Shown in pieces: positions 334 to 53,619 of a DNA stretch of 64,000 bases. A program made the position numbers and the translations under genes. The notes under the pieces are model-generated. The model saw nothing but the letters and a program-made list of their open reading frames with translations, ran no database searches and was not told where the DNA came from. The DNA lies in NCBI GenBank assembly GCA_053919585.1, contig CM132785.1, one strand, 5' to 3'. Every line of letters begins with the position of its first letter. Within the stretch, counting starts at the first letter, position 1. This DNA is from Euprymna scolopes (taxonomy: Eukaryota).

Positions 334-3300
334 CTGATGAAATGAAAGATAGATTCAATTTTAAAAGATTATTTTCTATGTATGCAATGTCGCATGAAGA
401 CAGATATGCACATATATATGATATGTATTTGTGTATCGCAGCATCACAGTTAAACAGTTGATCAGAGAGATAAACAAATTACGGATTTCAATCGACACAT
501 TTGGTCTAATGATTTATAGATGTCAAAAGTTCTAGAATTTTTCTAAAACAGATTATTCAAAATTAAAAGTATGTAACAATAAACTTAGAAACAAATATTC
601 CGACATTTTAGTATTGCTTTTTATAAAGAACTAAGTCTCATGTTGAATCATCCTACATATTTGATGCATAGTTCATTTTTAAGAAAAACCGTATAGAGAG
701 TTCCAAAATTAACCACCTATTTTGATATTAATTTTTATTTCAAAATAGATGGTTAATTTTTGGACAAACTGTATATTAACTTAATTATAACTAATTAACC
801 ATCAAAATAGATGGTTAATTTTTGGATAAACTGTATATTCGTTTTTTTTATTATAAAAATGAATAAGATCACTACTACATTTTTACTTTAATAAGAATTT
901 TTATTTTATATTCATGTTAAATTATTTTTATTTATTTTAAACAATCAAATTTTTTAATATCTGTGTAGAGACATAAAACAATCCCTAACCAAACTCACTC
1001 GAATAGGTAAAAATGAAAAAATATTTTTTTATTTTGCTTCTTGGTAAAGCATTCGCCTTCAGTTGCCATATATTATGATATTTTGAGTTCAAATCTAACA
1101 TTAGCAACTTGCTTTTTTTTCTAAGTTTTATTTGCTATGGCATCATTTTCTTGAATAAATATTTAATTAATATCCTTAATTTTTTATCTTGGCCATAAAA
1201 TTCAGGAAAATTTAAGCAATTCCACATGAACGGAGTTTTCAGTAAATATTTTATGATTAGCTTTTAATAAATCATTTTACGTTATATATTTGTTAACTGA
1301 GCATACATATTCTACAAAAATGAGAGATACATAATAACTGTGCCCACCTCTTTTTGGGGTTTCTTTCATGTCATATAATCTTTTTCTGGCACGTTGAATG
1401 GTTGAATCAAGTTCAGGCATACCTGCAGACACACACTGAATCATAACTGCCTCAAGTGTGTCTCTGTCTCCCTCTCTAATTGCTGACCTTAACTGATCAC
1501 GCAGTGTATCAGCTGATAATTGGCCTGAAGGTAAACGGTCAATGAGATCAATAACACAGAAGAAGATTGACAAAAATGATAGAAAATACACTACGTGCGT
1601 TAAGAGAAAATTGCAACCAATTTACAACAACTGACCTCCACGACCACCTCCCAAATTCTCTAGAACGTCCCTGGCTTTGCGAAGATCAGTCGATAGTTCT
1701 GGATATCTGGCAGATTCTGTTTCCAAAATTGCTTTCTCCAAGGCATTAATGTCTTTATCGTTGATAGCCAATGCCAATTGATCACGAAGTGTGTCTGGTA
1801 ATTTCACATCTGCCCAGAAAAAAGATTCCAAGCCATCAACAGAATTCAATTGCGAAGCTAACTACCAACATTACATTACAAAGAGAGTCGTATTAGAAAA
1901 CAATCAAATTCCATCGATCAACAAAAGAATGCAAATCTAACCTCCAGTGCCACCGCGTAGAATATCTGCTACACTTCTGGCCTTCTGGATATCAGCTGCC
2001 AGCTCTGGCATTCCAGCTGAAACACATTCGTTGATCGCTTTGTCCAACATGACTTTATCTTTCCTTTTCATTGCTTCATTTAATTTATTGTGGAGAAAAT
2101 CTGCCCTTTTAGTACCTGGTAAACCAATGAAAAATTATCGGTTAGAGTCTCAAAATATTACAAGATTTATTCAAGAAGTAATTTCACTGAATTTAAAAGT
2201 GAGAATATAACATGCGATTCTAACCTCCACGTCCACCACCAAGACTTTCCAAGGTGTCTCTTGCTTCAAGAAGATCTGAACTCACTTCTGGCAGGAAAGC
2301 CAGTTCTGCTTCTTTTATTACATTCTGAAGATCTTGTTCATCTTTTGATGCAATTGATTTCCTTATTTTTTCTCGTAAGGTGTCAGGGTTGACTAATATA
2401 GTTTCTAAAATAATTAAAACAACGTTAAAACAAATGGTGAATGTTTTAATATTGAAGACATGTCGATTTTCTATAAACAATTAGTTATTCACTTGTTTAA
2501 CACTGGCATTTAAGTTTCTGTGGCATAGTATCAAAAAGGAGCTTCGATCTTGCTTGTTTGAATTACATCATGTAAAACTTCTTTGGTTAATTTCAATATA
2601 TATCTGTTTCTAATAATAGAATGTTTTAGTTGTAATTCAGAGAGAAAATGTTTTTAAAAATGCTTAATAAAAATTAAACATGACAGAAGCACTACAAATA
2701 CTAAGCATGATAAGGCATTCTGAATAATTCTACCAGAGGCAGGGTTAGTATAATGCGAAACCTAACTAAAAGGGTTAATATAACCGCAACACAACGGTGG
2801 TAAAATCCAACAACTGTCTTTCACATAATTTTGCACTTTAAATCAAATAATATGAAATAGATTTAACATTGAGGAGCTATTAATAAACAGGAAATTTCTT
2901 TTAGAGTAATAATAGGAAACATTAGATAGACAAGAGTAAATGAATGTGCAAATTCAAACCTCGCTTTGGTGCATCATCCATTGCCTGTAACTTTCGCTTG
3001 GCTCGCTGTATAGAAACATCAAGTTCAGGCATACCTGCTGCTATGCATACTGTCAAAATTGCTTCCAAGTTTGCTCTATCTCCCTCTCTGATCGCCGATT
3101 TTAATTGATCACGCAATGTTACAGCTGATAATTTACCTAATGTACAAAAGTGAACAACACAAATGACATGAAAAGACCCTGCCTGATGAGAAATACGTCA
3201 AATACACAATGTGCGGTAAGAGAAAATTGCAACCAATTTATAACAACTGACCTCCACGACCACCTCCCAAATTCTCTAGAGCGTCCCTGGCTTTGCGAAG

Positions 3301-6300
3301 ATCAGTCGATAGTTCTGGATATCTGGCAGATTCTGTTTCCAAAATTGCTTTCTCCAGAGCCTTAATGTTCTTTTGCCTGATAGCCAATGTCAATTGATCA
3401 CGAAGTGTGTCTGGTAATTTCACATCTGCCCAGAAAAAAAAATTCATGCCATCAACAGAATAAATCGCGAAGCTAACTACCAATATTACATTACAAAGAG
3501 AGTCATATTAGAAAATAATCAAATTCCACCGACCAACAAAAGAATGCAAATCTAACCTCCAGTGCTACTGCGTAGAATATCTGCTACACTTCTGGCCTTC
3601 TGGATATCAGCTGCCAGCTCTGGCATTCCGGCTGAAACACATTCGCTGATCACTTTGTCCAACACGGTTCTGTCTTTTGCTTTCATCGCCTCGTCCAATT
3701 TTGCACGCAGACTGTCAACACTCTTAGTTCCTGACAAAGCACAATTACCAAGCATAAGTCAACAATAAATACGCCCCCACTATTCTTGAACAATACATAG
3801 AAATAACACATACTATATCGAATGCAAAGTATTTAGAAGGAAATCTAACCTCCGCGGCCACCACCCAGACTTTCCAGAGTGTCTCTGGCTTTAACTAGCT
3901 CTGAGCTCAATTCTGGAAGAGCTGCTTCTTCGGCCTCTTCTATCACGCTTTGCAAAGCGCTTATGTCTTTCGATGCGATTGCTTTCTTCAGTTTATCGCG
4001 AACACTGGTCGGGCTGGCCCATTCCGATTCTGCTAAAATTAACAAGAAACCTCCATTGAAACCAGCTAGAGAATGAGCCAGAAAACGAGGCAATAATAAA
4101 TCAGAATCATTATTATTTCCATAAAGCAATCACCTAAGAAAGAAATTTGGCAAAATTCAAACTTTATCACCTAACACTGGTTAAGATAACTGGATGAATT
4201 TCTAGCGATTAATGTTTGTAAATAATGTTAAATCCCGAGTGTGCCCACCTCGTTTTGGAGCCTCTTCCAAGTCTTGTAAAGTATGCCTGGCACGCTGTAT
4301 GGCAGAGTCGAGTTCAGGCATACCAGCGGACACACATTCAAGTAAAACAGCCTCCAGACTTTCTCTGTCTCCCTCTCTGATCGCTGTCCTTAACTGATCG
4401 TCCAATATGTCAGCTGATAATTTACCTAATGTACAAAAGTGAACAACACAAATAACATGAAAAGACCCTGCCTGATGAGAAATACGTCAAATACACAACG
4501 TGCGTTAAGAGAAAATTGCAACCAATTTACAACAACTGACCTCCACGACCACCTCCCAAATTCTCTAGAACGTCCCTGGCTTTGCGAAGATCAGTCGATA
4601 GTTCTGGATATCTGGCAGATTCTGTTTCCAAAATTGCTTTCTCCAAGGCATTAATGTCTTTATCGTTGATAGCCAATGTCAATTGATCACGAAGTGTGTC
4701 TGGTAATTTCACATCTGCCCAGAAAAAAAAATTCATGCCATCAACAGAATTCAATCGCGAAGCTAACTACCAACATTACATTACAAAGAGAGTCGTATTA
4801 GAAAATAATCAAATTCCAACAAAACAATGCAAATCTAACCTCCAGTGCCACCGCGTAGAATATCTGCTACACTTCTGGCCTTCTGGATATCAGCTGCCAG
4901 CTCTGGCATTCCGGCTGAAACACATTCGCTGATCACTTTGTCCAACACGGTTCTGTCTTTTGCTTTCATCGCCTCGTCCAATTTTGCACGCAGACTGTCA
5001 ACACTCTTAGTTCCTGACAAAGCACAATTACCAAGCATAAGTCAACAATAAATACGCCCCCACTATTCTTGAACAATACATAGAAATAACACATACTATA
5101 TCGAATGCAAAGTATTTAGAAGGAAATCTAACCTCCGCGGCCGCCACCCAGACTTTCCAGAGTGTCTCTGGCTTTAACTAGCTCTGAGCTCAATTCTGGA
5201 AGAGCTGCTTCTTCGGCCTCTTCTATCACGCTTTGCAAAGCGCTTATGTCTTTCGATGCGATTGCTTTCTTCAGTTTATCGCGAACACTGGTCGGGCTGG
5301 CCCATTCCGATTCCGCTAAAATTAACAAGAAACCTCCATTGAAACCAGCTAGAGAATGAGCCAGAAAACGAGGCAATAATAAATCAGAATCATTATTATT
5401 TCCATAAAGCAATCACCTAAGAAAGAAATTTGGCAAAATTCAAACTTTATCACCTAACACTGGTTAAGATAACTGGATGAATTTCTAGCGATTAATGTTT
5501 GTAAATAATGTTAAATCCCGAGTGTGCCCACCTCGTTTTGGAGCCTCTTCCAAGTCTTGTAAAGTATGCCTGGCACGCTGTATGGCAGAGTCGAGTTCAG
5601 GCATACCAGCGGACACACATTCAAGTAAAACAGCCTCCAGACTTTCTCTGTCTCCCTCTCTGATCGCTGTCCTTAACTGATCGTCCAATATGTCAGCTGA
5701 TAATTTACCTAATGTACAAAAGTGAACAACACAAATAACATGAAAAGACCCTGCCTGATGAGAAATACGTCAAATACACAACGTGCATTAAGAGAAAATT
5801 GCAACCAATTTACAACAACTGACCTCCACGACCACCTCCCAAATTCTCTAGAACGTCCCTGGCTTTGCGAAGATCAGTCGATAGTTCTGGATATCTGGCA
5901 GATTCTGTTTCCAAAATTGCTTTCTCCAGAGCCTTAATGTCCTTTTGCCTGATAGCCAATGTCAATTGATCACGAAGTGTTTCTGGTAATTTCACATCTG
6001 CCCAGAAAAAAAAATTCATGCCATCAACAGAATTCAATCGCGAAGCTAACTACCAACATTACATTACAAAGAGAGTCATATTAGAAAATAATCAAATTCC
6101 AACAACAAACAAAACAATGCAAATCTAACCTCCAGTGCCACCGCGTAGAATATCTGCTACACTTCTGGCCTTCTGGATATCAGCTGCCAGCTCTGGCATT
6201 CCGGCTGAAACACATTCGCTGATCACTTTGTCCAACACGGTTCTGTCTTTTGCTTTCATCGCCTCGTCCAATTTTGCACGCAGACTGTCAACACTCTTAG

Positions 6301-9300
6301 TTCCTGACAAAGCACAATTACCAAGCATAAGTCAACAATAAATACGCCCCCACTATTCTTGAACAATACATAGAAATAACACATACTATATCGAATGCAA
6401 AATATTTAGAAGGAAATCTAACCTCCGCGGCCGCCACCCAGACTTTCCAGAGTGTCTCTGGCTTTAACTAGCTCTGAGCTCAATTCTGGAAGAGCTGCTT
6501 CTTCGGCCTCTTCTATCACGCTTTGCAAAGCGCTTATGTCTTTCGATGCGATTGCTTTCTTCAGTTTATCGCGAACACTGGTCGGGCTGGCCCATTCCGA
6601 TTCTGCTAAAATTAACAAGAAACCTCCATTGAAACCAGCTAGAGAATGAGCCAGAAAACGAGGCAATAATAAATCAGAATCATTATTATTTCCATAAAGC
6701 AATCACCTAAGAAAGAAATTTGGCAAAATTCAAACTTTATCACCTAACACTGGTTAAGATAACTGGATGAATTTCTAGCGATTAATGTTTGTAAATAATG
6801 TTAAATCCCGAGTGTGCCCACCTCGTTTTGGAGCCTCTTCCAAGTCTTGTAAAGTATGCCTGGCACGCTGTATGGCAGAGTCGAGTTCAGGCATACCAGC
6901 GGACACACATTCAAGTAAAACAGCCTCCAGACTTTCTCTGTCTCCCTCTCTGATCGCTGTCCTTAACTGATCGTCCAATATGTCAGCTGATAATTTACCT
7001 AATGTACAAAAGTGAACAACACAAATAACATGAAAAGACCCTGCCTGATGAGAAATACGTCAAATACACAACGCGCGTTAAGAGAAAATTGCAACCAATT
7101 TACAACAACTGACCTCCACGACCACCTCCCAAATTCTCTAGAACGTCCCTTGCTTTGCGAAGATCAGTCAATAGTTCTGGATATCTGGCAGATTCTGTTT
7201 CCAAAATTGCTTTCTCCAGAGCCTTAATGTCCTTTTGCCTGATAGCCAATGTCAATTGATCACGAAGTGTGTCTGGTAATTTCACATCTGCCCAGAAAAA
7301 AAAATTCATGCCATCAACAGAATTCAATCGCGAAGCTAACTACCAACATTACATTACAAAAAAAAATCGTATTAGAAAATAATCAAATTCCAACAAAACA
7401 ATGCAAATCTAACCTCCAGTGCCACCGCGTAGAATATCTGCTACACTTCTGGCCTTCTGGATATCAGCTGCCAGCTCTGGCATTCCGGCTGAAACACATT
7501 CGCTGATCACTTTGTCCAACACGGTTCTGTCTTTTGCTTTCATCGCCTCGTCCAATTTTGCACGCAGACTGTCAACACTCTTAGTTCCTGACAAAGCACA
7601 ATTACCAAGCATAAGTCAACAATAAATACGCCCCCACTATTCTTGAACAATACATAGAAATAACACATACTATATCGAATGCAAAGTATTTAGAAGGAAA
7701 TCTAACCTCCGCGGCCGCCACCCAGACTTTCCAGAGTGTCTCTGGCTTTAACTAGCTCTGAGTTCAATTCTGGAAGAGCTGCTTCTTCGGCCTCTTCTAT
7801 CACGCTTTGCAAAGCGCTTATGTCTTTCGATGCGATTGCTTTCTTCAGTTTATCGCGAACACTGGTCGGGCTGGCCCATTCCGATTCCGCTAAAATTAAC
7901 AAGAAACCTCCATTGAAACCAGCTAGAGAATGAGCCAGAAAACGAGGCAATAATAAATCAGAATCATTATTATTTCCATAAAGCAATCACCTAAGAAAGA
8001 AATTTGGCAAAATTCAAACTTTATCACCTAACACTGGTTAAGATAACTGGATGAATTTCTAGCGATTAATGTTTGTAAATAATGTTAAATCCCGAGTGTG
8101 CCCACCTCGTTTTGGAGCCTCTTCCAAGTCTTGTAAAGTATGCCTGGCACGCTGTATGGCAGAGTCGAGTTCAGGCATACCAGCGGACACACATTCAAGT
8201 AAAACAGCCTCCAGACTTTCTCTGTCTCCCTCTCTGATCGCTGTCCTTAACTGATCGTCCAATATGTCAGCTGATAATTTACCTAATGTACAAAAGTGAA
8301 CAACACAAATAACATGAAAAGACCCTGCCTGATGAGAAATACGTCAAATACACAACGTGCATTAAGAGAAAATTGCAACCAATTTACAACAACTGACCTC
8401 CACGACCACCTCCCAAATTCTCTAGAACGTCCCTGGCTTTGCGAAGATCAGTCGATAGTTCTGGATATCTGGCAGATTCTGTTTCCAAAATTGCTTTCTC
8501 CAGAGCCTTAATGTCCTTTTGCCTGATAGCCAATGTCAATTGATCACGAAGTGTTTCTGGTATTTTCACATCTGCCCAGAAAAAAAAATTCATGCCATCA
8601 ACAGAATTCAATCGCGAAGCTAACTACCAACATTACATTACAAAGAGAGTCATATTAGAAAATAATCAAATTCCAACAACAAACAAAACAATGCAAATCT
8701 AACCTCCAGTGCCACCGCGTAGAATATCTGCTACACTTCTGGCCTTCTGGATATCAGCTGCCAGCTCTGGCATTCCGGCTGAAACACATTCGCTGATCAC
8801 TTTGTCCAACACGGTTCTGTCTTTTGCTTTCATCGCCTCGTCCAATTTTGCACGCAGACTGTCAACACTCTTAGTTCCTGACAAAGCACAATTACCAAGC
8901 ATAAGTCAACAATAAATACGCCCCCACTATTCTTGAACAATACATAGAAATAACACATACTATATCGAATGCAAAGTATTTAGAAGGAAATCTAACCTCC
9001 GCGGCCGCCACCCAGACTTTCCAGAGTGTCTCTGGCTTTAACTAGCTCTGAGCTCAATTCTGGAAGAGCTGCTTCTTCGGCCTCTTCTATCACGCTTTGC
9101 AAAGCGCTTATGTCTTTCGATGCGATTGCTTTCTTCAGTTTATCGCGAACACTGGTCGGGCTGGCCCATTCCGATTCTGCTAAAATTAACAAGAAACCTC
9201 CATTGAAACCAGCTAGAGAATGAGCCAGAAAACGAGGCAATAATAAATCAGAATCATTATTATTTCCATAAAGCAATCACCTAAGAAAGAAATTTGGCAA

Positions 9301-12300
9301 AATTCAAACTTTATCACCTAACACTGGTTAAGATAACTGGATGAATTTCTAGCGATTAATGTTTGTAAATAATGTTAAATCCCGAGTGTGCCCACCTCGT
9401 TTTGGAGCCTCTTCCAAGTCTTGTAAAGTATGCCTGGCACGCTGTATGGCAGAGTCGAGTTCAGGCATACCAGCGGACACACATTCAAGTAAAACAGCCT
9501 CCAGACTTTCTCTGTCTCCCTCTCTGATCGCTGTCCTTAACTGATCGTCCAATATGTCAGCTGATAATTTACCTAATGTACAAAAGTGAACAACACAAAT
9601 AACATGAAAAGACCCTGCCTGATGAGAAATACGTCAAATACACAACGTGCGTTAAGAGAAAATTGCAACCAATTTACAACAACTGACCTCCACGACCACC
9701 TCCCAAATTCTCTAGAACGTCCCTGGCTTTGCGAAGATCAGTCGATAGTTCTGGATATCTGGCAGATTCTGTTTCCAAAATTGCTTTCTCCAGAGCCTTA
9801 ATGTCCTTTTGCCTGATAGCCAATGTCAATTGATCACGAAGTGTGTCTGGTAATTTCACATCTGCCCAGAAAAAAAAATTCATGCCATCAACAGAATTCA
9901 ATCGCGAAGCTAACTACCAACATTACATTACAAAGAGAGTCGTATTAGAAAATAATCAAATTCCAACAAAACAATGCAAATCTAACCTCCAGTGCCACCG
10001 CGTAGAATATCTGCTACACTTCTGGCCTTCTGGATATCAGCTGCCAGCTCTGGCATTCCGGCTGAAACACATTCGCTGATCACTTTGTCCAACACGGTTC
10101 TGTCTTTTGCTTTCATCGCCTCGTCCAATTTTGCACGCAGACTGTCAACACTCTTAGTTCCTGACAAAGCACAATTACCAAGCATAAGTCAACAATAAAT
10201 ACGCCCCCACTATTCTTGAACAATACATAGAAATAACACATACTATATCGAATGCAAAGTATTTAGAAGGAAATCTAACCTCCGCGGCCGCCACCCAGAC
10301 TTTCCAGAGTGTCTCTGGCTTTAACTAGCTCTGAGCTCAATTCTGGAAGAGCTGCTTCTTCGGCCTCTTCTATCACGCTTTGCAAAGCGCTTATGTCTTT
10401 CGATGCGATTGCTTTCTTCAGTTTATCGCGAACACTGGTCGGGCTGGCCCATTCCGATTCTGCTAAAATTAACAAGAAACCTCCATTGAAACCAGCTAGA
10501 GAATGAGCCAGAAAACGAGGCAATAATAAATCAGAATCATTATTATTTCCATAAAGCAATCACCTAAGAAAGAAATTTGGCAAAATTCAAACTTTATCAC
10601 CTAACACTGGTTAAGATAACTGGATGAATTTCTAGCGATTAATGTTTGTAAATAATGTTAAATCCCGAGTGTGCCCACCTCGTTTTGGAGCCTCTTCCAA
10701 GTCTTGTAAAGTATGCCTGGCACGCTGTATGGCAGAGTCGAGTTCAGGCATACCAGCGGACACACATTCAAGTAAAACAGCCTCCAGACTTTCTCTGTCT
10801 CCCTCTCTGATCGCTGTCCTTAACTGATCGTCCAATATGTCAGCTGATAATTTACCTAATGTACAAAAGTGAACAACACAAATAACATGAAAAGACCCTG
10901 CCTGATGAGAAATACGTCAAATACACAACGTGCGTTAAGAGAAAATTGCAACCAATTTACAACAACTGACCTCCACGACCACCTCCCAAATTCTCTAGAA
11001 CGTCCCTGGCTTTGCGAAGATCAGTCGATAGTTCTGGATATCTGGCAGATTCTGTTTCCAAAATTGCTTTCTCCAGAGCCTTAATGTCCTTTTGCCTGAT
11101 AGCCAATGTCAATTGATCACGAAGTGTGTCTGGTAATTTCACATCTGCCCAGAAAAAAAAATTCATGCCATCAACAGAATTCAATCGCGAAGCTAACTAC
11201 CAACATTACATTACAAAGAGAGTCGTATTAGAAAATAATCAAATTCCAACAAAACAATGCAAATCTAACCTCCAGTGCCACCGCGTAGAATATCTGCTAC
11301 ACTTCTGGCCTTCTGGATATCAGCTGCCAGCTCTGGCATTCCGGCTGAAACACATTCGCTGATCACTTTGTCCAACACGGTTCTGTCTTTTGCTTTCATC
11401 GCCTTGTCCAATTTTGCACGCAGACTGTCAACACTCTTAGTTCCTGACAAAGCACAATTACCAAGCATAAGTCAACAATAAATACGCCCCCACTATTCTT
11501 GAACAATACATAGAAATAACACATACTATATCGAATGCAAAGTATTTAGAAGGAAATCTAACCTCCGCGGCCGCCACCCAGACTTTCCAGAGTGTCTCTG
11601 GCTTTAACTAGCTCTGAGCTCAATTCTGGAAGAGCTGCTTCTTCGGCCTCTTCTATCACGCTTTGCAAAGCGCTTATGTCTTTCGATGCGATTGCTTTCT
11701 TCAGTTTATCGCGAACACTGGTCGGGCTGGCCCATTCCGATTCTGCTAAAATTAACAAGAAACCTCCATTGAAACCAGCTAGAGAATGAGCCAGAAAACG
11801 AGGCAATAATAAATCAGAATCATTATTATTTCCATAAAGCAATCACCTAAGAAAGAAATTTGGCAAAATTCAAACTTTATCACCTAACACTGGTTAAGAT
11901 AACTGGATGAATTTCTAGCGATTAATGTTTGTAAATAATGTTAAATCCCGAGTGTGCCCACCTCGTTTTGGAGCCTCTTCCAAGTCTTGTAAAGTATGCC
12001 TGGCACGCTGTATGGCAGAGTCGAGTTCAGGCATACCAGCGGACACACATTCAAGTAAAACAGCCTCCAGACTTTCTCTGTCTCCCTCTCTGATCGCTGT
12101 CCTTAACTGATCGTCCAATATGTCAGCTGATAATTTACCTAATGTACAAAAGTGAACAACACAAATAACATGAAAAGACCCTGCCTGATGAGAAATACGT
12201 CAAATACACAACGTGCGTTAAGAGAAAATTGCAACCAATTTACAACAACTGACCTCCACGACCACCTCCCAAATTCTCTAGAACGTCCCTGGCTTTGCGA

Positions 12301-33300: not shown

Positions 33301-36300
33301 CAAGCATAAGTCAACAATAAATACGCCCCCACTATTCTTGAACAATACATAGAAATAACACATACTATATCGAATGCAAAGTATTTAGAAGGAAATCTAA
33401 CCTCCGCGGCCGCCACCCAGACTTTCCAGAGTGTCTCTGGCTTTAACTAGCTCTGAGCTCAATTCTGGAAGAGCTGCTTCTTCGGCCTCTTCTATCACGC
33501 TTTGCAAAGCGCTTATGTCTTTCGATGCGATTGCTTTCTTCAGTTTATCGCGAACACTGGTCGGGCTGGCCCATTCCGATTCTGCTAAAATTAACAAGAA
33601 ACCTCCATTGAAACCAGCTAGAGAATGAGCCAGAAAACGAGGCAATAATAAATCAGAATCATTATTATTTCCATAAAGCAATCACCTAAGAAAGAGATTT
33701 GGCAAAATTCAAACTTTATCACCTAACACTGGTTAAGATAACTGGATGAATTTCTAGCGATTAATGTTTGTAAATAATGTTAAATCCCGAGTGTGCCCAC
33801 CTCGTTTTGGAGCCTCTTCCAAGTCTTGTAAAGTATGCCTGGCACGCTGTATGGCAGAGTCGAGTTCAGGCATACCAGCGGACACACATTCAAGTAAAAC
33901 AGCCTCCAGACTTTCTCTGTCTCCCTCTCTGATCGCTGTCCTTAACTGATCGTCCAATATGTCAGCTGATAATTTACCTAATGTACAAAAGTGAACAACA
34001 CAAATAACATGAAAAGACCCTGCCTGATGAGAAATACGTCAAATACACAACGTGCATTAAGAGAAAATTGCAACCAATTTACAACAACTGACCTCCACGA
34101 CCACCTCCCAAATTCTCTAGAACGTCCCTGGCTTTGCGAAGATCAGTCGATAGTTCTGGATATCTGGCAGATTCTGTTTCCAAAATTGCTTTCTCCAGAG
34201 CCTTAATGTCCTTTTGCCTGATAGCCAATGTCAATTGATCACGAAGTGTGTCTGGTAATTTCACATCTGCCCAGAAAAAAAAATTCATGCCATCAACAGA
34301 ATTCAATCGCGAAGCTAACTACCAACATTACATTACAAAGAGAGTCGTATTAGAAAATAATCAAATTCCAACAACCAACAAAACAATGCAAATCTAACCT
34401 CCAGTGCCACCGCGTAGAATATCTGCTACACTTCTGGCCTTCTGGATATCAGCTGCCAGCTCTGGCATTCCGGCTGAAACACATTCGCTGAGCACTTTGT
34501 CCAACACGGTTCTGTCTTTTGCTTTCATCGCCTCGTCCAATTTTGCACGCAGACTGTCAACACTCTTAGTTCCTGACAAAGCACAATTACCAAGCATAAG
34601 TCAACAATAAATACGCCCCCACTATTCTTGAACAATACATAGAAATAACACATACTATATCGAATGCAAAGTATTTAGAAGGAAATCTAACCTCCGCGGC
34701 CGCCACCCAGACTTTCCAGAGTGTCTCTGGCTTTAACTAGCTCTGAGCTCAATTCTGGAAGAGCTGCTTCTTCGGCCTCTTCTATCACGCTTTGCAAAGC
34801 GCTTATGTCTTTCGATGCGATTGCTTTCTTCAGTTTATCGCGAACACTGGTCGGGCTGGCCCATTCCGATTCTGCTAAAATTAACAAGAAACCTCCATTG
34901 AAACCAGCTAGAGAATGAGCCAGAAAACGAGGCAATAATAAATAAGAATCATTATTATTTCCATAAAGCAATCACCTAAGAAAGAGATTTGACAAAATTC
35001 AAACTTTATCACCTAACACTGGTTAAGATAACTGGATGAATTTCTAGCGATTAATGTTTGTAAATAATGTTAAATCCCGAGTGTGCCCACCTCGTTTTGG
35101 AGCCTCTTCCAAGTCTTGTAAAGTATGCCTGGCACGCTGTATGGCAGAGTCGAGTTCAGGCATACCAGCGGACACACATTCAAGTAAAACAGCCTCCAGA
35201 CTTTCTCTGTCTCCCTCTCTGATCGCTGTCCTTAACTGATCGTCCAATATGTCAGCTGATAATTTACCTAATGTACAAAAGTGAACAACACAAATAACAT
35301 GAAAAGACCCTGCCTGATGAGAAATACGTCAAATACACAACGTGCGTTAAGAGAAAATTGCAACCAATTTACAACAACTGACCTCCACGACCACCTCCCA
35401 AATTCTCTAGAACGTCCCTGGCTTTGCGAAGATCAGTCGATAGTTCTGGATATCTGGCAGATTCTGTTTCCAAAATTGCTTTCTCCAGAGCCTTAATGTC
35501 CTTTTGCCTGATAGCCAATGTCAATTGATCACGAAGTGTGTCTGGTAATTTCACATCTGCCCAGAAAAAAAAATTCATGCCATCAACAGAATTCAATCGC
35601 GAAGCTAACTACCAACATTACATTACAAAGAGAGTCGTATTAGAAAATAATCAAATTCCAACAACCAACAAAACAATGCAAATCTAACCTCCAGTGCCAC
35701 CGCGTAGAATATCTGCTACACTTCTGGCCTTCTGGATATCAGCTGCCAGCTCTGGCATTCCGGCTGAAACACATTCGCTGATCACTTTGTCCAACACGGT
35801 TCTGTCTTTTGCTTTCATCGCCTCGTCCAATTTTGCACGCAGACTGTCAACACTCTTAGTTCCTGACAAAGCACAATTACCAAGCATAAGTCAACAATAA
35901 ATACGCCCCCACTATTCTTGAACAATACATAGAAATAACACATACTATATCGAATGCAAAGTATTTAGAAGGAAATCTAACCTCCGCGGCCGCCACCCAG
36001 ACTTTCCAGAGTGTCTCGTGCTTTAACTAGCTCTGAGCTCAATTCTGGAAGAGCTGCTTCTTCGGCCTCTTCTATCACGCTTTGCAAAGCGCTTATGTCT
36101 TTCGATGCGATTGCTTTCTTCAGTTTATCGCGAACACTGGTCGGGCTGGCCCATTCCGATTCTGCTAAAATTAACAAGAAACCTCCATTGAAACCAGCTA
36201 GAGAATGAGCCAGAAAACGAGGCAATAATAAATCAGAATCATTATTATTTCCATAAAGCAATCACCTAAGAAAGAAATTTGGCAAAATTCAAACTTTATC

Positions 36301-39300
36301 ACCTAACACTGGTTAAGATAACTGGATGAATTTCTAGCGATTAATGTTTGTAAATAATGTTAAATCCCGAGTGTGCCCACCTCGTTTTGGAGCCTCTTCC
36401 AAGTCTTGTAAAGTATGCCTGGCACGCTGTATGGCAGAGTCGAGTTCAGGCATACCAGCGGACACACATTCAAGTAAAACAGCCTCCAGACTTTCTCTGT
36501 CTCCCTCTCTGATCGCTGTCCTTAACTGATCGTCCAATATGTCAGCTGATAATTTACCTAATGTACAAAAGTGAACAACACAAATAACATGAAAAGACCC
36601 TGCCTGATGAGAAATACGTCAAATACACAACGTGCGTTAAGAGAAAATTGCAACCAATTTACAACAACTGACCTCCACGACCACCTCCCAAATTCTCTAG
36701 AACGTCCCTTGCTTTGCGAAGATCAGTCGATAGTTCTGGATATCTGGCAGATTCTGTTTCCAAAATTGCTTTCTCCAGAGCCTTAATGTCCTTTTGCCTG
36801 ATAGCCAATGTCAATTGATCACGAAGTGTGTCTGGTAATTTCACATCTGCCCAGAAAAAAAAATTCATGCCATCAACAGAATTCAATCGCGAAGCTAACT
36901 ACCAACATTACATTACAAAGAGAGTCGTATTAGAAAATAATCAAATTCCAACAACCAACAAAACAACGCAAATCTAACCTCCAGTGCCACCGCGTAGAAT
37001 ATCTGCTACACTTCTGGCCTTCTGGATATCAGCTGCCAGCTCTGGCATTCCGGCTGAAACACATTCGCTGAGCACTTTGTCCAACACGGTTCTGTCTTTT
37101 GCTTTCATCGCCTCGTCCAATTTTGCACGCAGACTGTCAACACTCTTAGTTCCTGACAAAGCACAATTACCAAGCATAAGTCAACAATAAATACGCCCCC
37201 ACTATTCTTGAACAATACATAGAAATAACACATACTATATCGAATGCAAAGTATTTAGAAGGAAATCTAACCTCCGCGGCCGCCACCCAGACTTTCCAGA
37301 GTGTCTCTGGCTTTAACTAGCTCTGAGCTCAATTCTGGAAGAGCTGCTTCTTCGGCCTCTTCTATCACGCTTTGCAAAGCGCTTATGTCTTTCGATGCGA
37401 TTGCTTTCTTCAGTTTATCGCGAACACTGGTCGGGCTGGCCCATTCCGATTCTGCTAAAATTAACAAGAAACCTCCATTGAAACCAGCTAGAGAATGAGC
37501 CAGAAAACGAGGCAATAATAAATCAGAATCATTATTATTTCCATAAAGCAATCACCTAAGAAAGAAATTTGGCAAAATTCAAACTTTATCACCTAACACT
37601 GGTTAAGATAACTGGATGAATTTCTAGCGATTAATGTTTGTAAATAATGTTAAATCCCGAGTGTGCCCACCTCGTTTTGGAGCCTCTTCCAAGTCTTGTA
37701 AAGTATGCCTGGCACGCTGTATGGCAGAGTCGAGTTCAGGCATACCAGCGGACACACATTCAAGTAAAACAGCCTCCAGACTTTCTCTGTCTCCCTCTCT
37801 GATCGCTGTCCTTAACTGATCGTCCAATATGTCAGCTGATAATTTACCTAATGTACAAAAGTGAACAACACAAATAACATGAAAAGACCCTGCCTGATGA
37901 GAAATACGTCAAATACACAACGTGCGTTAAGAGAAAATTGCAACCAATTTACAACAACTGACCTCCACGACCACCTCCCAAATTCTCTAGAACGTCCCTG
38001 GCTTTGCGAAGATCAGTCGATAGTTCTGGATATCTGGCAGATTCTGTTTCCAAAATTGCTTTCTCCAGAGCCTTAATGTCCTTTTGCCTGATAGCCAATG
38101 TCAATTGATCACGAAGTGTGTCTGGTAATTTCACATCTGCCCAGAAAAAAAAATTCATGCCATCAACAGAATTCAATCGCGAAGCTAACTACCAACATTA
38201 CATTACAAAGAGAGTCGTATTAGAAAATAATCAAATTCCAACAACCAACAAAACAATGCAAATCTAACCTCCAGTGCCACCGCGTAGAATATCTGCTACA
38301 CTTCTGGCCTTCTGGATATCAGCTGCCAGCTCTGGCATTCCGGCGGAAACACATTCGCTGAGCACTTTGTCCAACACGGTTCTGTCTTTTGCTTTCATCG
38401 CCTCGTCCAATTTTGCACGCAGACTGTCAACACTCTTAGTTCCTGACAAAGCACAATTACCAAGCATAAGTCAACAATAAATACGCCCCCACTATTCTTG
38501 AACAATACATAGAAATAACACATACTATATCGAATGCAAAGTATTTAGAAGGAAATCTAACCTCCGCGGCCGCCACCCAGACTTTCCAGAGTGTCTCTGG
38601 CTTTAACTAGCTCTGAGCTCAATTCTGGAAGAGCTGCTTCTTCGGCCTCTTCTATCACGCTTTGCAAAGCGCTTATGTCTTTCGATGCGATTGCTTTCTT
38701 CAGTTTATCGCGAACACTGGTCGGGCTGGCCCATTCCGATTCTGCTAAAATTAACAAGAAACCTCCATTGAAACCAGCTAGAGAATGAGCCAGAAAACGA
38801 GGCAATAATAAATCAGAATCATTATTATTTCCATAAAGCAATCACCTAAGAAAGAAATTTGGCAAAATTCAAACTTTATCACCTAACACTGGTTAAGATA
38901 ACTGGATGAATTTCTAGCGATTAATGTTTGTAAATAATGTTAAATCCCGAGTGTGCCCACCTCGTTTTGGAGCCTCTTCCAAGTCTTGTAAAGTATGCCT
39001 GGCACGCTGTATGGCAGAGTCGAGTTCAGGCATACCAGCGGACACACATTCAAGTAAAACAGCCTCCAGACTTTCTCTGTCTCCCTCTCTGATCGCTGTC
39101 CTTAACTGATCGTCCAATATGTCAGCTGATAATTTACCTAATGTACAAAAGTGAACAACACAAATAACATGAAAAGACCCTGCCTGATGAGAAATACGTC
39201 AAATACACAACGTGCGTTAAGAGAAAATTGCAACCAATTTACAACAACTGACCTCCACGACCACCTCCCAAATTCTCTAGAACGTCCCTTGCTTTGCGAA

Positions 39301-42300
39301 GATCAGTCGATAGTTCTGGATATCTGGCAGATTCTGTTTCCAAAATTGCTTTCTCCAGAGCCTTAATGTCCTTTTGCCTGATAGCCAATGTCAATTGATC
39401 ACGAAGTGTGTCTGGTAATTTCACATCTGCCCAGAAAAAAAAATTCATGCCATCAACAGAATTCAATCGCGAAGCTAACTACCAACATTACATTACAAAG
39501 AGAGTCGTATTAGAAAATAATCAAATTCCAACAAAACAATGCAAATCTAACCTCCAGTGCCACCGCGTAGAATATCTGCTACACTTCTGGCCTTCTGGAT
39601 ATCAGCTGCCAGCTCTGGCATTCCGGCTGAAACACATTCGCTGATCACTTTGTCCAACACGGTTCTGTCTTTTGCTTTCATCGCCTCGTCCAATTTTGCA
39701 CGCAGACTGTCAACACTCTTAGTTCCTGACAAAGCACAATTACCAAGCATAAGTCAACAATAAATACGCCCCCACTATTCTTGAACAATACATAGAAATA
39801 ACACATACTATATCGAATGCAAAGTATTTAGAAGGAAATCTAACCTCCGCGGCCGCCACCCAGACTTTCCAGAGTGTCTCTGGCTTTAACTAGCTCTGAG
39901 CTCAATTCTGGAAGAGCTGCTTCTTCGGCCTCTTCTATCACGCTTTGCAAAGCGCTTATGTCTTTCGATACGATTGCTTTCTTCAGTTTATCGCGAACAC
40001 TGGTCGGGCTGGCCCATTCCGATTCTGCTAAAATTAACAAGAAACCTCCATTGAAACCAGCTAGAGAATGAGCCAGAAAACGAGGCAATAATAAATCAGA
40101 ATCATTATTATTTCCATAAAGCAATCACCTAAGAAAGAAATTTGGCAAAATTCAAACTTTATCACCTAACACTGGTTAAGATAACTGGATGAATTTCTAG
40201 CGATTAATGTTTGTAAATAATGTTAAATCCCGAGTGTGCCCACCTCGTTTTGGAGCCTCTTCCAACTCTTGTAAAGTATGCCTGGCACGCTGTATGGCAG
40301 AGTCGAGTTCAGGCATACCAGCGGACACACATTCAAGTAAAACAGCCTCCAGACTTTCTCTGTCTCCCTCTCTGATCGCTGTCCTTAACTGATCGTCCAA
40401 TATGTCAGCTGATAATTTACCTAATGTACAAAAGTGAACAACACAAATAACATGAAAAGACCCTGCCTGATGAGAAATACGTCAAATACACAACGTGCGT
40501 TAAGAGAAAATTGCAACCAATTTACAACAACTGACCTCCACGACCACCTCCCAAATTCTCTAGAACGTCCCTTGCTTTGCGAAGATCAGTCGATAGTTCT
40601 GGATATCTGGCAGATTCTGTTTCCAAAATTGCTTTCTCCAGAGCCTTAATGTCCTTTTGCCTGATAGCCAATGTCAATTGATCACGAAGTGTGTCTGGTA
40701 ATTTCACATCTGCCCAGAAAAAAAAATTCATGCCATCAACAGAATTCAATCGCGAAGCTAACTACCAACATTACATTACAAAGAGAGTCGTATTAGAAAA
40801 TAATCAAATTCCAACAACCAACAAAACAATGCAAATCTAACCTCCAGTGCCACCGCGTAGAATATCTGCTACACTTCTGGCCTTCTGGATATCAGCTGCC
40901 AGCTCTGGCATTCCGGCTGAAACACATTCGCTGATCACTTTGTCCAACACGGTTCTGTCTTTTGCTTTCATCGCCTCGTCCAATTTTGCACGCAGACTGT
41001 CAACACTCTTAGTTCCTGACAAAGCACAATTACCAAGCATAAGTCAACAATAAATACGCCCCCACTATTCTTGAACAATACATAGAAATAACACATACTA
41101 TATCGAATGCAAAGTATTTAGAAGGAAATCTAACCTCCGCGGCCGCCACCCAGACTTTCCAGAGTGTCTCTGGCTTTAACTAGCTCTGAGCTCAATTCTG
41201 GAAGAGCTGCTTCTTCGGCCTCTTCTATCACGCTTTGCAAAGCGCTTATGTCTTTCGATGCGATTGCTTTCTTCAGTTTATCGCGAACACTGGTCGGGCT
41301 GGCCCATTCCGATTCTGCTAAAATTAACAAGAAACCTCCATTGAAACCAGCTAGAGAATGAGCCAGAAAACGAGGCAATAATAAATCAGAATCATTATTA
41401 TTTCCATAAAGCAATCACCTAAGAAAGAAATTTGGCAAAATTCAAACTTTATCACCTAACACTGGTTAAGATAACTGGATGAATTTCTAGCGATTAATGT
41501 TTGTAAATAATGTTAAATCCCGAGTGTGCCCACCTCGTTTTGGAGCCTCTTCCAAGTCTTGTAAAGTATGCCTGGCACGCTGTATGGCAGAGTCGAGTTC
41601 AGGCATACCAGCGGACACACATTCAAGTAAAACAGCCTCCAGACTTTCTCTGTCTCCCTCTCTGATCGCTGTCCTTAACTGATCGTCCAATATGTCAGCT
41701 GATAATTTACCTAATGTACAAAAGTGAACAACACAAATAACATGAAAAGACCCTGCCTGATGAGAAATACGTCAAATACACAACGTGCGTTAAGAGAAAA
41801 TTGCAACCAATTTACAACAACTGACCTCCACGACCACCTCCCAAATTCTCTAGAACGTCCCTTGCTTTGCGAAGATCAGTCGATAGTTCTGGATATCTGG
41901 CAGATTCTGTTTCCAAAATTGCTTTCTCCAGAGCCTTAATGTCCTTTTGCCTGATAGCCAATGTCAATTGATCACGAAGTGTGTCTGGTAATTTCACATC
42001 TGCCCAGAAAAAAAAATTCATGCCATCAACAGAATTCAATCGCGAAGCTAACTACCAACATTACATTACAAAGAGAGTCGTATTAGAAAATAATCAAATT
42101 CCAACAACCAACAAAACAACGCAAATCTAACCTCCAGTGCCACCGCGTAGAATATCTGCTACACTTCTGGCCTTCTGGATATCAGCTGCCAGCTCTGGCA
42201 TTCCGGCTGAAACACATTCGCTGAGCACTTTGTCCAACACGGTTCTGTCTTTTGCTTTCATCGCCTCGTCCAATTTTGCACGCAGACTGTCAACACTCTT

Positions 42301-45300
42301 AGTTCCTGACAAAGCACAATTACCAAGCATAAGTCAACAATAAATACGCCCCCACTATTCTTGAACAATACATAGAAATAACACATACTATATCGAATGC
42401 AAAGTATTTAGAAGGAAATCTAACCTCCGCGGCCGCCACCCAGACTTTCCAGAGTGTCTCTGGCTTTAACTAGCTCTGAGCTCAATTCTGGAAGAGCTGC
42501 TTCTTCGGCCTCTTCTATCACGCTTTGCAAAGCGCTTATGTCTTTCGATGCGATTGCTTTCTTCAGTTTATCGCGAACACTGGTCGGGCTGGCCCATTCC
42601 GATTCTGCTAAAATTAACAAGAAACCTCCATTGAAACCAGCTAGAGAATGAGCCAGAAAACGAGGCAATAATAAATCAGAATCATTATTATTTCCATAAA
42701 GCAATCACCTAAGAAAGAAATTTGGCAAAATTCAAACTTTATCACCTAACACTGGTTAAGATAACTGGATGAATTTCTAGCGATTAATGTTTGTAAATAA
42801 TGTTAAATCCCGAGTGTGCCCACCTCGTTTTGGAGCCTCTTCCAAGTCTTGTAAAGTATGCCTGGCACGCTGTATGGCAGAGTCGAGTTCAGGCATACCA
42901 GCGGACACACATTCAAGTAAAACAGCCTCCAGACTTTCTCTGTCTCCCTCTCTGATCGCTGTCCTTAACTGATCGTCCAATATGTCAGCTGATAATTTAC
43001 CTAATGTACAAAAGTGAACAACACAAATAACATGAAAAGACCCTGCCTGATGAGAAATACGTCAAATACACAACGTGCGTTAAGAGAAAATTGCAACCAA
43101 TTTACAACAACTGACCTCCACGACCACCTCCCAAATTCTCTAGAACGTCCCTGGCTTTGCGAAGATCAGTCGATAGTTCTGGATATCTGGCAGATTCTGT
43201 TTCCAAAATTGCTTTCTCCAGAGCCTTAATGTCCTTTTGCCTGATAGCCAATGTCAATTGATCACGAAGTGTGTCTGGTAATTTCACATCTGCCCAGAAA
43301 AAAAAATTCATGCCATCAACAGAATTCAATCGCGAAGCTAACTACCAACATTACATTACAAAGAGAGTCGTATTAGAAAATAATCAAATTCCAACAACCA
43401 ACAAAACAATGCAAATCTAACCTCCAGTGCCACCGCGTAGAATATCTGCTACACTTCTGGCCTTCTGGATATCAGCTGCCAGCTCTGGCATTCCGGCTGA
43501 AACACATTCGCTGAGCACTTTGTCCAACACGGTTCTGTCTTTTGCTTTCATCGCCTCGTCCAATTTTGCACGCAGACTGTCAACACTCTTAGTTCCTGAC
43601 AAAGCACAATTACCAAGCATAAGTCAACAATAAATACGCCCCCACTATTCTTGAACAATACATAGAAATAACACATACTATATCGAATGCAAAGTATTTA
43701 GAAGGAAATCTAACCTCCGCGGCCGCCACCCAGACTTTCCAGAGTGTCTCTGGCTTTAACTAGCTCTGAGCTCAATTCTGGAAGAGCTGCTTCTTCGGCC
43801 TCTTCTATCACGCTTTGCAAAGCGCTTATGTCTTTCGATGCGATTGCTTTCTTCAGTTTATCGCGAACACTGGTCGGGCTGGCCCATTCCGATTCTGCTA
43901 AAATTAACAAGAAACCTCCATTGAAACCAGCTAGAGAATGAGCCAGAAAACGAGGCAATAATAAATCAGAATCATTATTATTTCCATAAAGCAATCACCT
44001 AAGAAAGAAATTTGGCAAAATTCAAACTTTATCACCTAACACTGGTTAAGATAACTGGATGAATTTCTAGCGATTAATGTTTGTAAATAATGTTAAATCC
44101 CGAGTGTGCCCACCTCGTTTTGGAGCCTCTTCCAAGTCTTGTAAAGTATGCCTGGCACGCTGTATGGCAGAGTCGAGTTCAGGCATACCAGCGGACACAC
44201 ATTCAAGTAAAACAGCCTCCAGACTTTCTCTGTCTCCCTCTCTGATCGCTGTCCTTAACTGATCGTCCAATATGTCAGCTGATAATTTACCTAATGTACA
44301 AAAGTGAACAATACAAATAACATGAAAAGACCCTGCCTGATGAGAAATACGTCAAATACACAACGTGCGTTAAGAGAAAATTGCAACCAATTTACAACAA
44401 CTGACCTCCACGACCACCTCCCAAATTCTCTAGAACGTCCCTGGCTTTGCGAAGATCAGTCGATAGTTCTGGATATCTGGCAGATTCTGTTTCCAAAATT
44501 GCTTTCTCCAGAGCCTTAATGTCCTTTTGCCTGATCGCCAATGTTAATTCATCCTGAAGTGCGTTAGGAGTTTTTACATCTGTCCAATAATTATGTGGCA
44601 CTATTAATAGAATAAAATCAGAGTCTATTACGGTAACATTTACAATTGAATTACTTTTTTAATCTGGAATTTCATATTTATGAAACATCATGCTGACCTT
44701 CAGGTGCAATGTGTAATTTATCTGTTAATTTCTTTGCTTGCTGCATATCAACGGCTTGTTCAGGTATGTCTGCTGACACACTGACCCTGATTACTTCCTT
44801 TAACACATTTTCGTCTTTTCCTTTCATTGCTTCCACCAATTTATGCCGTAATCGCTCTGTTTCTTCACTCCCTGTTCAAAATACATTTTTATGTTTTATT
44901 ATGACATTTTCACTGTTTGTTTTTCATCAATCTTATGCACATATCTTGTCTTTGTGGGAATTCCTATTTTTAAGTATTTTCACTCAGTCTGTTTGCTTGA
45001 TTTTTACTTACTCTTTTTTGCTTATAAACTAAATCTCGAGTACGGTTGTAGTTTATTTTTTTAAACATCCCTCTATTTCTGTGTCTTTATGTTATTTTAC
45101 GAAAGTAATCCTTTTCGATCGTCAGAAGCAACGATCCGCCTTTGAATTTCCAATAAATGTCTATTAATAATGGTTATCATGTAGAAAAATAAATTCCGGA
45201 GCATAAAAGTCGTTCATTTTTATGGTACATGTTTTAATAAAATTGAGGCGTATACTATTGGAACGACCGTATGACAAAGCGTACTCTGGATGCCTATGCC

Positions 45301-46351: not shown

Positions 46352-46420
<69 letters not shown>

Positions 46421-46729
46421 GTCCTTTTCTTTCTCATTTTTTAAATATATTTCTGCAATATTTTATAAAAAAACATCTTATACTTCATTTAGGTTTTATA
46501 TTCATGACATAAATTATGTTCATGTTATTTTTGTAATAACGTAGTTCTCTTTTTTAGCATTTATACATTTTACGATGTATATATATTGTGAAAATTTATT
46601 TTACCTTGTTTTTTTACCCTCCCTCACCTTACAAAATTTAAGTTGAGCACTGTAATCGAACTTATTTCTCCTAATATATTTTCATACTATATATGAAATG
46701 TAAACTCCAATAATTTTATGTTGTTCCTG

Positions 46730-46774
<45 letters not shown>

Positions 46775-47252: not shown

Positions 47253-47309
<57 letters not shown>

Positions 47310-48099: not shown

Positions 48100-48155
<56 letters not shown>

Positions 48156-49544: not shown

Positions 49545-49610
<66 letters not shown>

Positions 49611-52740: not shown

Positions 52741-52850
52741 CTAAAGTACGAAATTGTCAAAATTTATTGAATATTTAGGGAATATTAAAAAAGATGAGAC
52801 TGAATAAAATCATAAAAATGTACTTTTAAAAACCGGTGAAATATTGACAA

Positions 52851-52901
<51 letters not shown>

Positions 52902-52912
52902 AATAATAATAT
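52851..52912. repeat. (ATT)n/(TAA)n microsatellite
   Basis: Direct reading. Confidence 0.92.

Positions 52913-53546: not shown

Positions 53547-53619
<73 letters not shown>

What the first reader, a model, noticed from the sequence alone, without database searches (positions are those of the whole stretch)
3120..44535. 41-kb coding VNTR: 32 exon+intron units homogenised to near identity with the reading frame intact
Seen: introns are about as conserved as exons between units. The only length changes I noticed (7 bp, 1 bp) are intronic. None of the 128 exons shows a stop or frameshift in the ORF track, although scattered missense changes occur (e.g. I>L in KVISE, D>E in LQDLE, R>H, A>V). Inference: very recent expansion or ongoing concerted evolution. 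Protein length probably varies between alleles in steps of ~236 aa.
Basis: partly seen in the sequence, partly recalled or inferred. Interest (0 to 1): 0.7.

Follow-up and report, generated by a model that had tools for sequence, protein, structure and literature searches.

The report
Young 32-copy exon array in giant gene
A 41-kb stretch of a giant cephalopod muscle-protein-like (KY-like) gene is a block of four small exons plus introns copied 32 times almost perfectly. It is a real, very young in-frame repeat of a known kind, but whether copy number varies between animals or the exons are used could not be tested.

Summary
On the minus strand, window 3137-44290 holds 32 complete head-to-tail units of 1283-1290 bp, plus a 245-bp partial unit up to 44535. 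Units are on average 99.5% identical.

- **Unit structure:** each unit has four phase-1/phase-1 exons (59+61+58+58 codons = 236 aa). All 128 exons have AG/GT splice sites, no stop and no indel.
- **Exons versus introns:** introns are as conserved as exons (diversity 0.56% against 0.50%). All three indel events lie in one intron.
- **Host gene:** each exon encodes one ~58-aa three-helix module with no Pfam family. The array sits in the tail of a giant cephalopod KY-like (kyphoscoliosis-peptidase-like) gene. I counted 323 such exons in 264 kb, all on one strand, in an old four-module super-repeat that octopus shares.
- **Origin:** very recent amplification of one super-repeat with continuing exchange. 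Shared variants cluster, the 3' edge units diverge, and a ~430-bp conversion tract lies in the flank.
- **Limits:** the intact frame is expected by chance at this age, so it does not show selection. Older copies do show purifying selection (dN/dS mostly 0.1-0.3).

The scan had already described this gene in adjacent windows. The kind is known (LPA KIV-2, nebulin, NBPF).

The parts
3137..44290 (-). 32 complete tandem units (U01 at 44290-43001 to U32 at 4425-3137). Each has exons D-A-B-C with three internal introns and one junction intron. Together they hold 22,656 coding nt, or 7,552 codons.
44291..44535 (-). 5' partial unit: the 3' part of a C-type exon plus the C-to-D intron. It is identical to the unit; identity drops sharply upstream of about 44524-44535, inside the exon.
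   Evidence: (L005 row)
5532..5708 (-). Example exon D (unit U31), 59 codons, phase 1-1, AG/GT.
5133..5315 (-). Example exon A (unit U31), 61 codons, phase 1-1.
4840..5013 (-). Example exon B (unit U31), 58 codons, phase 1-1.
4541..4714 (-). Example exon C (unit U31), 58 codons, phase 1-1. In U31 it carries a cluster of 8 changes that match the flanking C-type exon at 1637-1804.
1358..3136 (-). Older flanking super-repeat copy (D', A', B', C', D'' exons), mostly 42-80% identical to the unit.
1590..2010 (-). Tract of about 430 bp (3' half of exon B', the intron, exon C') that is 95-100% identical to the array consensus. I read it as a gene-conversion tract or a relic of an earlier array edge.
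   Evidence: offsets 1616 and 2905; dS 0.08 for C' against 0.45-1.8 for its neighbours
44711..52732 (-). Seven diverged single-module exons of the same gene lying between the two young arrays.
54696..64000 (-). Second young array: 3084-bp unit of 8 module exons, 99.8% identical at lag 3084, 6.2 units. It runs off the window to about coordinate 73749.

Best explanation
The array is a real intragenic macrosatellite in the repeat tail of a giant cephalopod KY-like (kyphoscoliosis-peptidase-like, transglutaminase-like) gene. The tail is built from hundreds of one-exon, ~58-aa three-helix modules joined by glycine-rich linkers. They are arranged in an old four-module super-repeat (D-A-B-C). One compact copy of that super-repeat (708 coding nt, 575-582 nt of short introns) was amplified very recently to 32 copies by unequal exchange or replication-based duplication. 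It is still exchanging sequence with itself and with flanking copies by gene conversion. Every exon is phase 1-1, so each added unit inserts 236 aa in frame. If all exons are spliced in, the array alone adds 7,552 aa of near-identical beads-on-a-string modules.

Shown: the structure, the youth of the array, the conversion tract, the host locus, and purifying selection on older modules.

Inferred: the mechanism of amplification, inclusion of the exons in mRNA, allelic variation in copy number, and any mechanical or scaffold role.
For: **Array anatomy and identity:**

**Assembly consistency**
- The longest exact repeat inside the array is 2,325 bp.
- Any two placements of a ~10-kb stretch differ at 29 or more sites. 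Accurate long reads could therefore place every unit, and the array is not a degenerate assembly cycle.
- The exact open frames of exons A and B occur on 8 and 6 independent Logan contigs, the longest 1313 bp. That equals 1283+30, the length expected if a 1283-bp tandem unit closes on itself in a 31-mer graph. This last point is my inference.

**Array dynamics**
- Shared variants sit in adjacent units, and units U29-U32 carry most of the private changes.
- A mosaic conversion tract lies in the flank.

**Host gene**
- All 167 module hits in the window and all 323 in 264 kb are on the minus strand.
- Outside the young arrays, 141 of 142 exons have a phase-1 donor and 142 of 142 a matching acceptor. 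The other phases score 23-49.
- Module types recur at lag 4 (0.67, against 0.07-0.28 at lags 1-3). The same order is seen in octopus P0156.
- Upstream exons on the same strand at C3:154,974,692-154,991,742 are 59-86% identical to octopus KY-like protein P0123. One carries Ig-like_KY at 1e-58.
- Octopus P0156 and P0123 carry Transglut_core and Ig-like_KY ahead of 16 modules in P0156 and one in the partial P0123.
- The junction residues I predict (G, D, G at the split codons) match the octopus protein.

**Coding reality**
- Older copies compared with the array give dN/dS of mostly 0.1-0.3.
- Against the 3084-bp array, exon identity is 0.80 and intron identity 0.63.

**Module fold**
- The module folds as a three-helix bundle, pLDDT 84.
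- A three-module octopus fragment has low confidence at its linkers and pTM 0.34.
Against: - I obtained no read evidence.
- Within the array there is no detectable purifying selection (dN/dS 0.64, p=0.15), so the sequence cannot say whether these 128 exons are used.
- Similarity falls with distance across all units (permutation p=0.004), but not within U1-U28 alone (p=0.28). The spatial signal therefore rests largely on the edge units and on visual clustering of shared variants.
- A 134-N gap lies 8.6 kb upstream at 53116-53249, so local assembly is not flawless.
- I did not show that the KY-like head and the array belong to one transcript. They are about 116 kb apart.
Confidence: 0.72

Rival explanations
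1. Assembly artefact: the true locus holds far fewer units (over-expansion) or many more (collapse), and 32 is a product of the assembler.
For: Arrays at 99.5% identity are hard to assemble. An N gap lies nearby at 53116-53249. I obtained no reads. Three unit pairs are identical.
Against: There is no exact repeat longer than 2,325 bp. Any ~10-kb placement differs from every other at 29 or more sites. The variant pattern is not periodic. The unit is found at this locus only. Independent short-read assemblies contain the exact unit frames on contigs of the length expected for a closed 1283-bp tandem unit; that reading is my inference.
Confidence: 0.1
2. An old array kept uniform: it has existed for a long time and is held at near identity by continuous unequal exchange and conversion, possibly under selection for length, rather than being a recent burst.
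For: There is a conversion tract between the array and a non-adjacent flank copy. The edge units are divergent, as expected for long-lived arrays. A second homogenised array lies in the same gene. Related D-type exon frames at 71-86% identity sit on ~1.1-1.4-kb contigs from other samples.
Against: Nothing here separates this from a recent burst, and the two are not exclusive. Only two homogenised arrays exist in the 264 kb examined; the other ~140 exons have diverged freely, so homogenisation is not a general property of the gene.
Confidence: 0.25
3. Real DNA array that is largely silent: most or all of the 128 exons are skipped, or the segment is a neutral by-product of DNA instability that contributes little to the protein.
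For: There is no purifying selection within the array, and the intact frame is expected by chance. All exons are symmetric, so any subset can be skipped in frame.
Against: All 256 splice dinucleotides are intact, though that too is likely by chance (P=0.41). The amplified super-repeat belongs to module types under purifying selection elsewhere in the gene. Neighbouring exons of the gene are reported as spliced one after another (s1-279838; I did not check it).
Confidence: 0.2

Closest known systems
LPA kringle IV type 2 array (human apolipoprotein(a)); from established knowledge, not tested here
   Same: The tandem unit contains exons and introns, the units are near-identical including introns, each is in frame so each adds one protein block, and there are tens of copies.
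   Different: The LPA unit is about 5.5 kb with two exons for one kringle, and its copy-number polymorphism and effect on protein size are proven. Here the unit is 1.29 kb with four exons for four helical modules, and variation is untested.
Nebulin triplicate region and titin super-repeats (giant muscle proteins); from established knowledge
   Same: A multi-exon super-repeat block was recently duplicated inside a giant modular gene with one module per exon and an old higher-order super-repeat.
   Different: Nebulin has 3 copies of an 8-exon block. Here there are 32 copies of a 4-exon block plus a second array of 6.2 copies of an 8-exon block. The module fold is unrelated (a three-helix bundle, not nebulin or Ig/Fn3 repeats).
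NBPF Olduvai (DUF1220) triplet arrays; from established knowledge
   Same: Lineage-specific hyper-amplification of multi-exon, in-frame domain units with high identity.
   Different: That is a primate gene family with many paralogues and a different domain. Here there is a single locus.
KY / kyphoscoliosis peptidase-like proteins (Pfam Transglut_core + Ig-like_KY), e.g. Octopus vulgaris CAI9725887 (P0156)
   Same: The upstream exons on the same strand are 59-86% identical to the octopus protein and carry Ig-like_KY. The octopus protein has the same ~58-aa modules in the same D-A-B-C order.
   Different: The octopus model has 16 modules. This locus has at least 323 in 264 kb, with candidates further downstream. 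As far as I know, vertebrate KY has no such tail.

Membership tests
Intragenic multi-exon macrosatellite (coding VNTR of the LPA KIV-2 type) | Head-to-tail units of 1 kb or more, each containing exons and introns | tested here: met
   32 units of 1283-1290 bp, four exons each
Intragenic multi-exon macrosatellite (coding VNTR of the LPA KIV-2 type) | Units preserve the reading frame, so copy number changes protein length | tested here: met
   All exons are phase 1-1, 708 nt per unit, no stops, no exon indels
Intragenic multi-exon macrosatellite (coding VNTR of the LPA KIV-2 type) | Near identity of units including introns | tested here: met
   Diversity is 0.50% in exons and 0.56% in introns
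Intragenic multi-exon macrosatellite (coding VNTR of the LPA KIV-2 type) | Copy number varies between individuals or alleles | not testable with these tools
The unit is present at one locus only in the assembly.
Intragenic multi-exon macrosatellite (coding VNTR of the LPA KIV-2 type) | Repeated exons are included in the mRNA | not testable with these tools
No RNA reads were obtainable.
KY / kyphoscoliosis peptidase-like family | Ig-like_KY domains (PF23265) | tested here: met
   The own-genome exon L024:7883-9247:- scores 1.1e-58 with 3 stretches
KY / kyphoscoliosis peptidase-like family | Transglutaminase-like core (PF01841) | tested here: inconclusive
   The two own-genome exons scanned alone give no Pfam match. 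They are 79% and 86% identical to octopus P0156 residues 80-156 and 157-292, which hold its Transglut_core match at 93-202. I did not search the joined exons.
KY / kyphoscoliosis peptidase-like family | Head domains and module tail lie in one transcript | not testable with these tools
   They share strand and order, and the octopus models join them, but I have no RNA evidence for this genome.
KY / kyphoscoliosis peptidase-like family | Catalytic Cys-His-Asp triad of the transglutaminase-like core | not tested
   Outside the finding; not examined.

The most novel reading that the evidence does not exclude
All 128 near-identical exons are translated as part of a single KY-like protein of more than 30,000 aa, comparable to titin. 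The number of 236-aa super-repeats then differs between individuals or populations. That would make this a naturally length-polymorphic molecular tether or ruler in cephalopod cells, with ongoing unequal exchange as the tuning mechanism.
Probability: 0.2. Interest if true: 0.75.

Novelty: new member of a known kind. Interest (0 to 1): 0.5.

Why it matters
Arrays of whole exon-plus-intron units at this identity and copy number are rare and are usually lost or collapsed in assemblies. This one gives a clean, datable snapshot of how giant modular proteins grow. A compact super-repeat is amplified in one burst, the edges then decay, and conversion leaks into the flanks. If copy number varies, it would be a large natural protein-length polymorphism in an undescribed, possibly titin-sized cephalopod protein. 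It also warns annotators: no protein model longer than a few modules exists for this gene outside octopus in 1.8 billion representative proteins.

Tried and rejected

- Tandem Repeats Finder found nothing because its period limit is 500.
- Pfam gives no family for any of the four modules. The best match, DUF1843, has E=0.019, below its cut-off.
- The ESM Atlas returned only unnamed clusters at 0.90-0.91 with a low recognition score. I did not use it.
- The word search with one exon returned six short fragments only.
- Foldseek against PDB found nothing at E<=0.001.
- VIA-align wide gave a best Z of 8.5 to a TPR-like domain, within the range the tool calls common for helical bundles. I therefore name no fold family.
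- The PDB sequence search matched only de novo designed helical proteins.
- Ankyrin and Roc proteins, and protist proteins, in the profile search (P0040, P0013, P0056, P0077) match only parts of the profile or have shorter repeats. I do not treat them as family members.
- Literature searches for KY-like proteins in cephalopods, hillarin, and giant repeat proteins in squid or cuttlefish found no description of this gene.

The 3' end of the gene below C3:154,734,001 was not read.

- I made all searches exon by exon, by reference.

**Ideas rejected**
- I rejected the idea that the intact frame shows selection.
Full report
**1. The observation**

The window has one N run, at 53116-53249. K-mer offsets peak at 1283 and 1290 bp between about 3.1 and 44.5 kb. 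A second repeat with period 3084 bp runs from 54.6 kb to the window end. Tandem Repeats Finder reported nothing because its longest period is 500.

Reading the minus strand shows four exons per unit, with AG acceptors and GT donors. Exon-start motifs recur 32 times in register.

I cut 32 units from window 44290 down to 3137. Their lengths are 1290 bp (13 units), 1283 bp (17 units), 1284 bp (U29) and 1289 bp (U32). Unit pairs differ on average at 6.8 positions (99.5% identity), at most 24, and three pairs are identical. Of 1291 alignment columns, 79 vary.

Upstream, a partial unit is identical to the unit from 44291 up to about 44524-44535, inside a C-type exon. Identity then collapses.

Comparing exon and intron columns:
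- Exon columns number 708, with diversity 0.50%.
- Intron columns number 583, with diversity 0.56%.
- All 128 acceptors are AG and all 128 donors are GT.
- Exon columns contain no gaps.

The three indel events all lie in the intron between exons B and C. They are a 7-bp indel carried by 14 units, a 1-bp insertion in U29 and a 1-bp deletion in U32.

There is no stop in any of the 128 exons. There are 23 non-synonymous and 11 synonymous variants. The four exons hold 59, 61, 58 and 58 codons, which is 236 aa per unit and 7,552 codons for the array.

**2. Is the assembled array credible?**

Internal checks are what remain:
- The longest exact repeat anywhere in the array is 2,325 bp.
- Two placements of a run of 8 units (about 10 kb) differ at 29 or more sites. 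For 12 units the minimum is 48.
- Accurate reads of 10-15 kb can therefore be placed uniquely, and the array is not a degenerate cycle.
- The variant pattern is not periodic.
- The unit occurs only at this locus in the 5.9-Gb assembly.
- The exact open frames around exons A and B are present in Logan assemblies of public runs, on 8 and 6 contigs, the longest 1313 bp.

That length equals 1283+30, which is what a 1283-bp tandem unit gives when it closes on itself in a 31-mer graph. This reading is my inference, and I could not fetch the contigs.

None of these checks measures copy number.

**3. What the exons encode and where they sit**

Each exon encodes one ~58-aa module. It has a conserved Asp-x3-Leu, a Pro-Glu(-Leu) turn, an Ala-Arg pair and a glycine-rich tail.

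No Pfam family matches. AlphaFold2, run with 25 module copies as the alignment, gives a three-helix bundle with mean pLDDT 84. Foldseek, a wide structural search and a PDB sequence search give only generic helical or designed proteins.

A profile of the module finds 167 hits in the window, all on the minus strand, 128 of them in the array.

A profile search of 1.84 billion representative proteins finds only 243 matches. Most are single-exon fragments. The named matches are octopus proteins:
- an 'uncharacterized protein LOC128248363';
- 'kyphoscoliosis peptidase-like, partial' from Octopus bimaculoides;
- a 2,069-aa 'Transglutaminase-like domain-containing protein' from Octopus vulgaris.

Two of these, the O. 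vulgaris protein (P0156) and P0123, the representative of the kyphoscoliosis peptidase-like cluster, carry Transglut_core and three Ig-like_KY stretches. In P0156 these are followed by 16 modules; the partial P0123 has one module at its C-terminal end.

In the window's own genome, minus-strand exons at C3:154,974,692-154,991,742 are 59-86% identical to the octopus head region. That is about 97-114 kb upstream of the window in gene sense. One of these exons scores 1e-58 for Ig-like_KY. Two others align at 79% and 86% to the octopus residues that hold the transglutaminase-like core.

The resulting 264 kb holds 323 module exons, all on the minus strand. They begin at C3:154,968,552 and still continue at the lower end of the stretch. 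Further candidates reach down to about C3:154.41 Mb.

Outside the young arrays, 141 of 142 exons have a phase-1 GT donor and 142 of 142 have a compatible AG acceptor. The other phases score 23-49.

Module types recur with period four (match 0.67 at lag 4, against 0.07-0.28 at lags 1-3). The same D-A-B-C order is visible in the octopus protein. The four-module super-repeat is therefore old. The split-codon residues I predict at the exon junctions match the octopus protein.

The organism is a cephalopod. I did not determine which one.

**4. How the array arose**

Only two stretches of the 264 kb are young arrays: this one, and the 3084-bp, 8-exon array (6.2 units, 99.8% identical at lag 3084).

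The amplified unit is unusually compact, at 13 exons per 4 kb against 2-6 elsewhere.

Variants shared by several units sit in neighbouring units, for example in U8-U11, in U17-U19, and in U15-U19 with U21 and U24. The 7-bp insertion marks U1-U3, U5-U11, U13, U28, U30 and U32. Private changes pile up in the 3' edge units: 7 in U29, 8 in U31 and 15 in U32.

Similarity falls with distance across all units (permutation p=0.004). It does not within U1-U28 alone (p=0.28).

The eight clustered changes in exon C of U31 reproduce the sequence of the flanking C-type exon at 1637-1804.

The flanking copy at 1300-3136 is 42-80% identical to the unit, except for a ~430-bp tract at about 1590-2010 that is 95-100% identical. 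In agreement, dS against the array is 0.08 for that exon but 0.45-1.8 for its neighbours. This is the signature of gene conversion, or of an earlier array edge.

Together these results fit a very recent amplification by unequal exchange, followed by continuing exchange.

**5. Selection**

Within the array, dN/dS is 0.64, not different from neutral (p=0.15).

About 4.7% of random substitutions in these exons would create a stop. With ~35 exonic changes, P(no stop) is about 0.2. P(all three indels intronic) is 0.09, and P(no splice dinucleotide hit) is 0.41. The intact frame is therefore what youth alone predicts.

Older copies do show constraint. Their dN/dS against the array consensus is mostly 0.1-0.3. 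Against the 3084-bp array, exon identity is 0.80 and intron identity 0.63. The module is a real, constrained coding unit. Whether these 128 young copies are used is open.

**6. Likely working**

This section is inference.

The octopus protein has no obvious signal peptide at its start. The family's vertebrate member, KY, is a muscle Z-disc-associated protein; that is established knowledge, not tested here.

A three-module octopus fragment, folded without an alignment (single sequence), gives three separate bundles. Confidence is low at the glycine-rich linkers and pTM is 0.34.

The tail would therefore be a long flexible chain of small bundles. It could act as a tether, spacer or multivalent scaffold anchored by the KY-like head. 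The array would lengthen that chain by 128 modules.

**7. Relation to known things and to earlier notes**

The kind is known. Examples are LPA kringle IV-2, the nebulin triplicate region and NBPF Olduvai arrays (established knowledge). This array is a new member, notable for 128 exons at 99.5% identity.

Earlier notes of this scan had already described:
- the host gene from adjacent windows (s1-259177, s1-295486);
- the 3084-bp array (s1-295803);
- a recent coding-unit amplification in another gene of this genome (s1-279843).

I reached the KY-like assignment independently, before reading those notes.

One note reports expression and mostly sequential splicing, with some exon skipping, in a neighbouring window (s1-279838). 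I could not check it.

Literature searches found no description of this gene.

**8. Limits**

- No reads were laid, so copy number, allelic variation and expression are untested.
- The gene's 3' end was not read.
- All searches were made exon by exon, by reference. The joined spliced model was not searched or folded.

Noticed in passing
window 54696-64000, continuing to about 73749 (L015): A second young array in the same gene: a 3084-bp unit of 8 module exons (two super-repeats), 6.2 units, with 3-12 differences between units. It is about 72% identical to the 1.29-kb unit at DNA level.
   Followed up: partly
window 1590-2010: A ~430-bp tract 95-100% identical to the array consensus lies inside an otherwise 42-80% identical flanking copy. 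It is a likely gene-conversion tract. The same pattern (low dS) appears for C- and B-type exons just below the window start, at about -285 and 18.
   Followed up: partly
window 53116-53249: A 134-N run sits in an AT-rich (26% GC) intron between the two arrays.
   Followed up: no
window 46248-54182: The long introns between the arrays carry many perfect dinucleotide microsatellites (TA, CA and TG runs of 15-31 copies). The introns inside the arrays have none.
   Followed up: no
G000 C27:96,022,246-96,030,045 and 96,115,974-96,123,421; C75:5,241-13,579; C21:47,958,286-47,960,022: Other KY-like paralogues, 28-48% identical to the octopus head region. They include a near-duplicate pair on C27, and the matches contain in-frame stops that may be introns. 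No module tail was seen in the hits listed.
   Followed up: no
proteins P0013, P0056, P0077, P0087: Dinoflagellate, Rhodelphis and other protist proteins carry 8-19 copies of a shorter helical repeat with a similar (A/G)-D-x3-L ... A-G-L-P/x-E motif. I could not tell whether this is distant homology or convergence.
   Followed up: no
Logan contigs holding P0159 and P0160: The longest contig carrying the exact array frames is 1313 bp, which is 1283+30. That is as expected for a tandem unit collapsed in a 31-mer graph.
   Followed up: no
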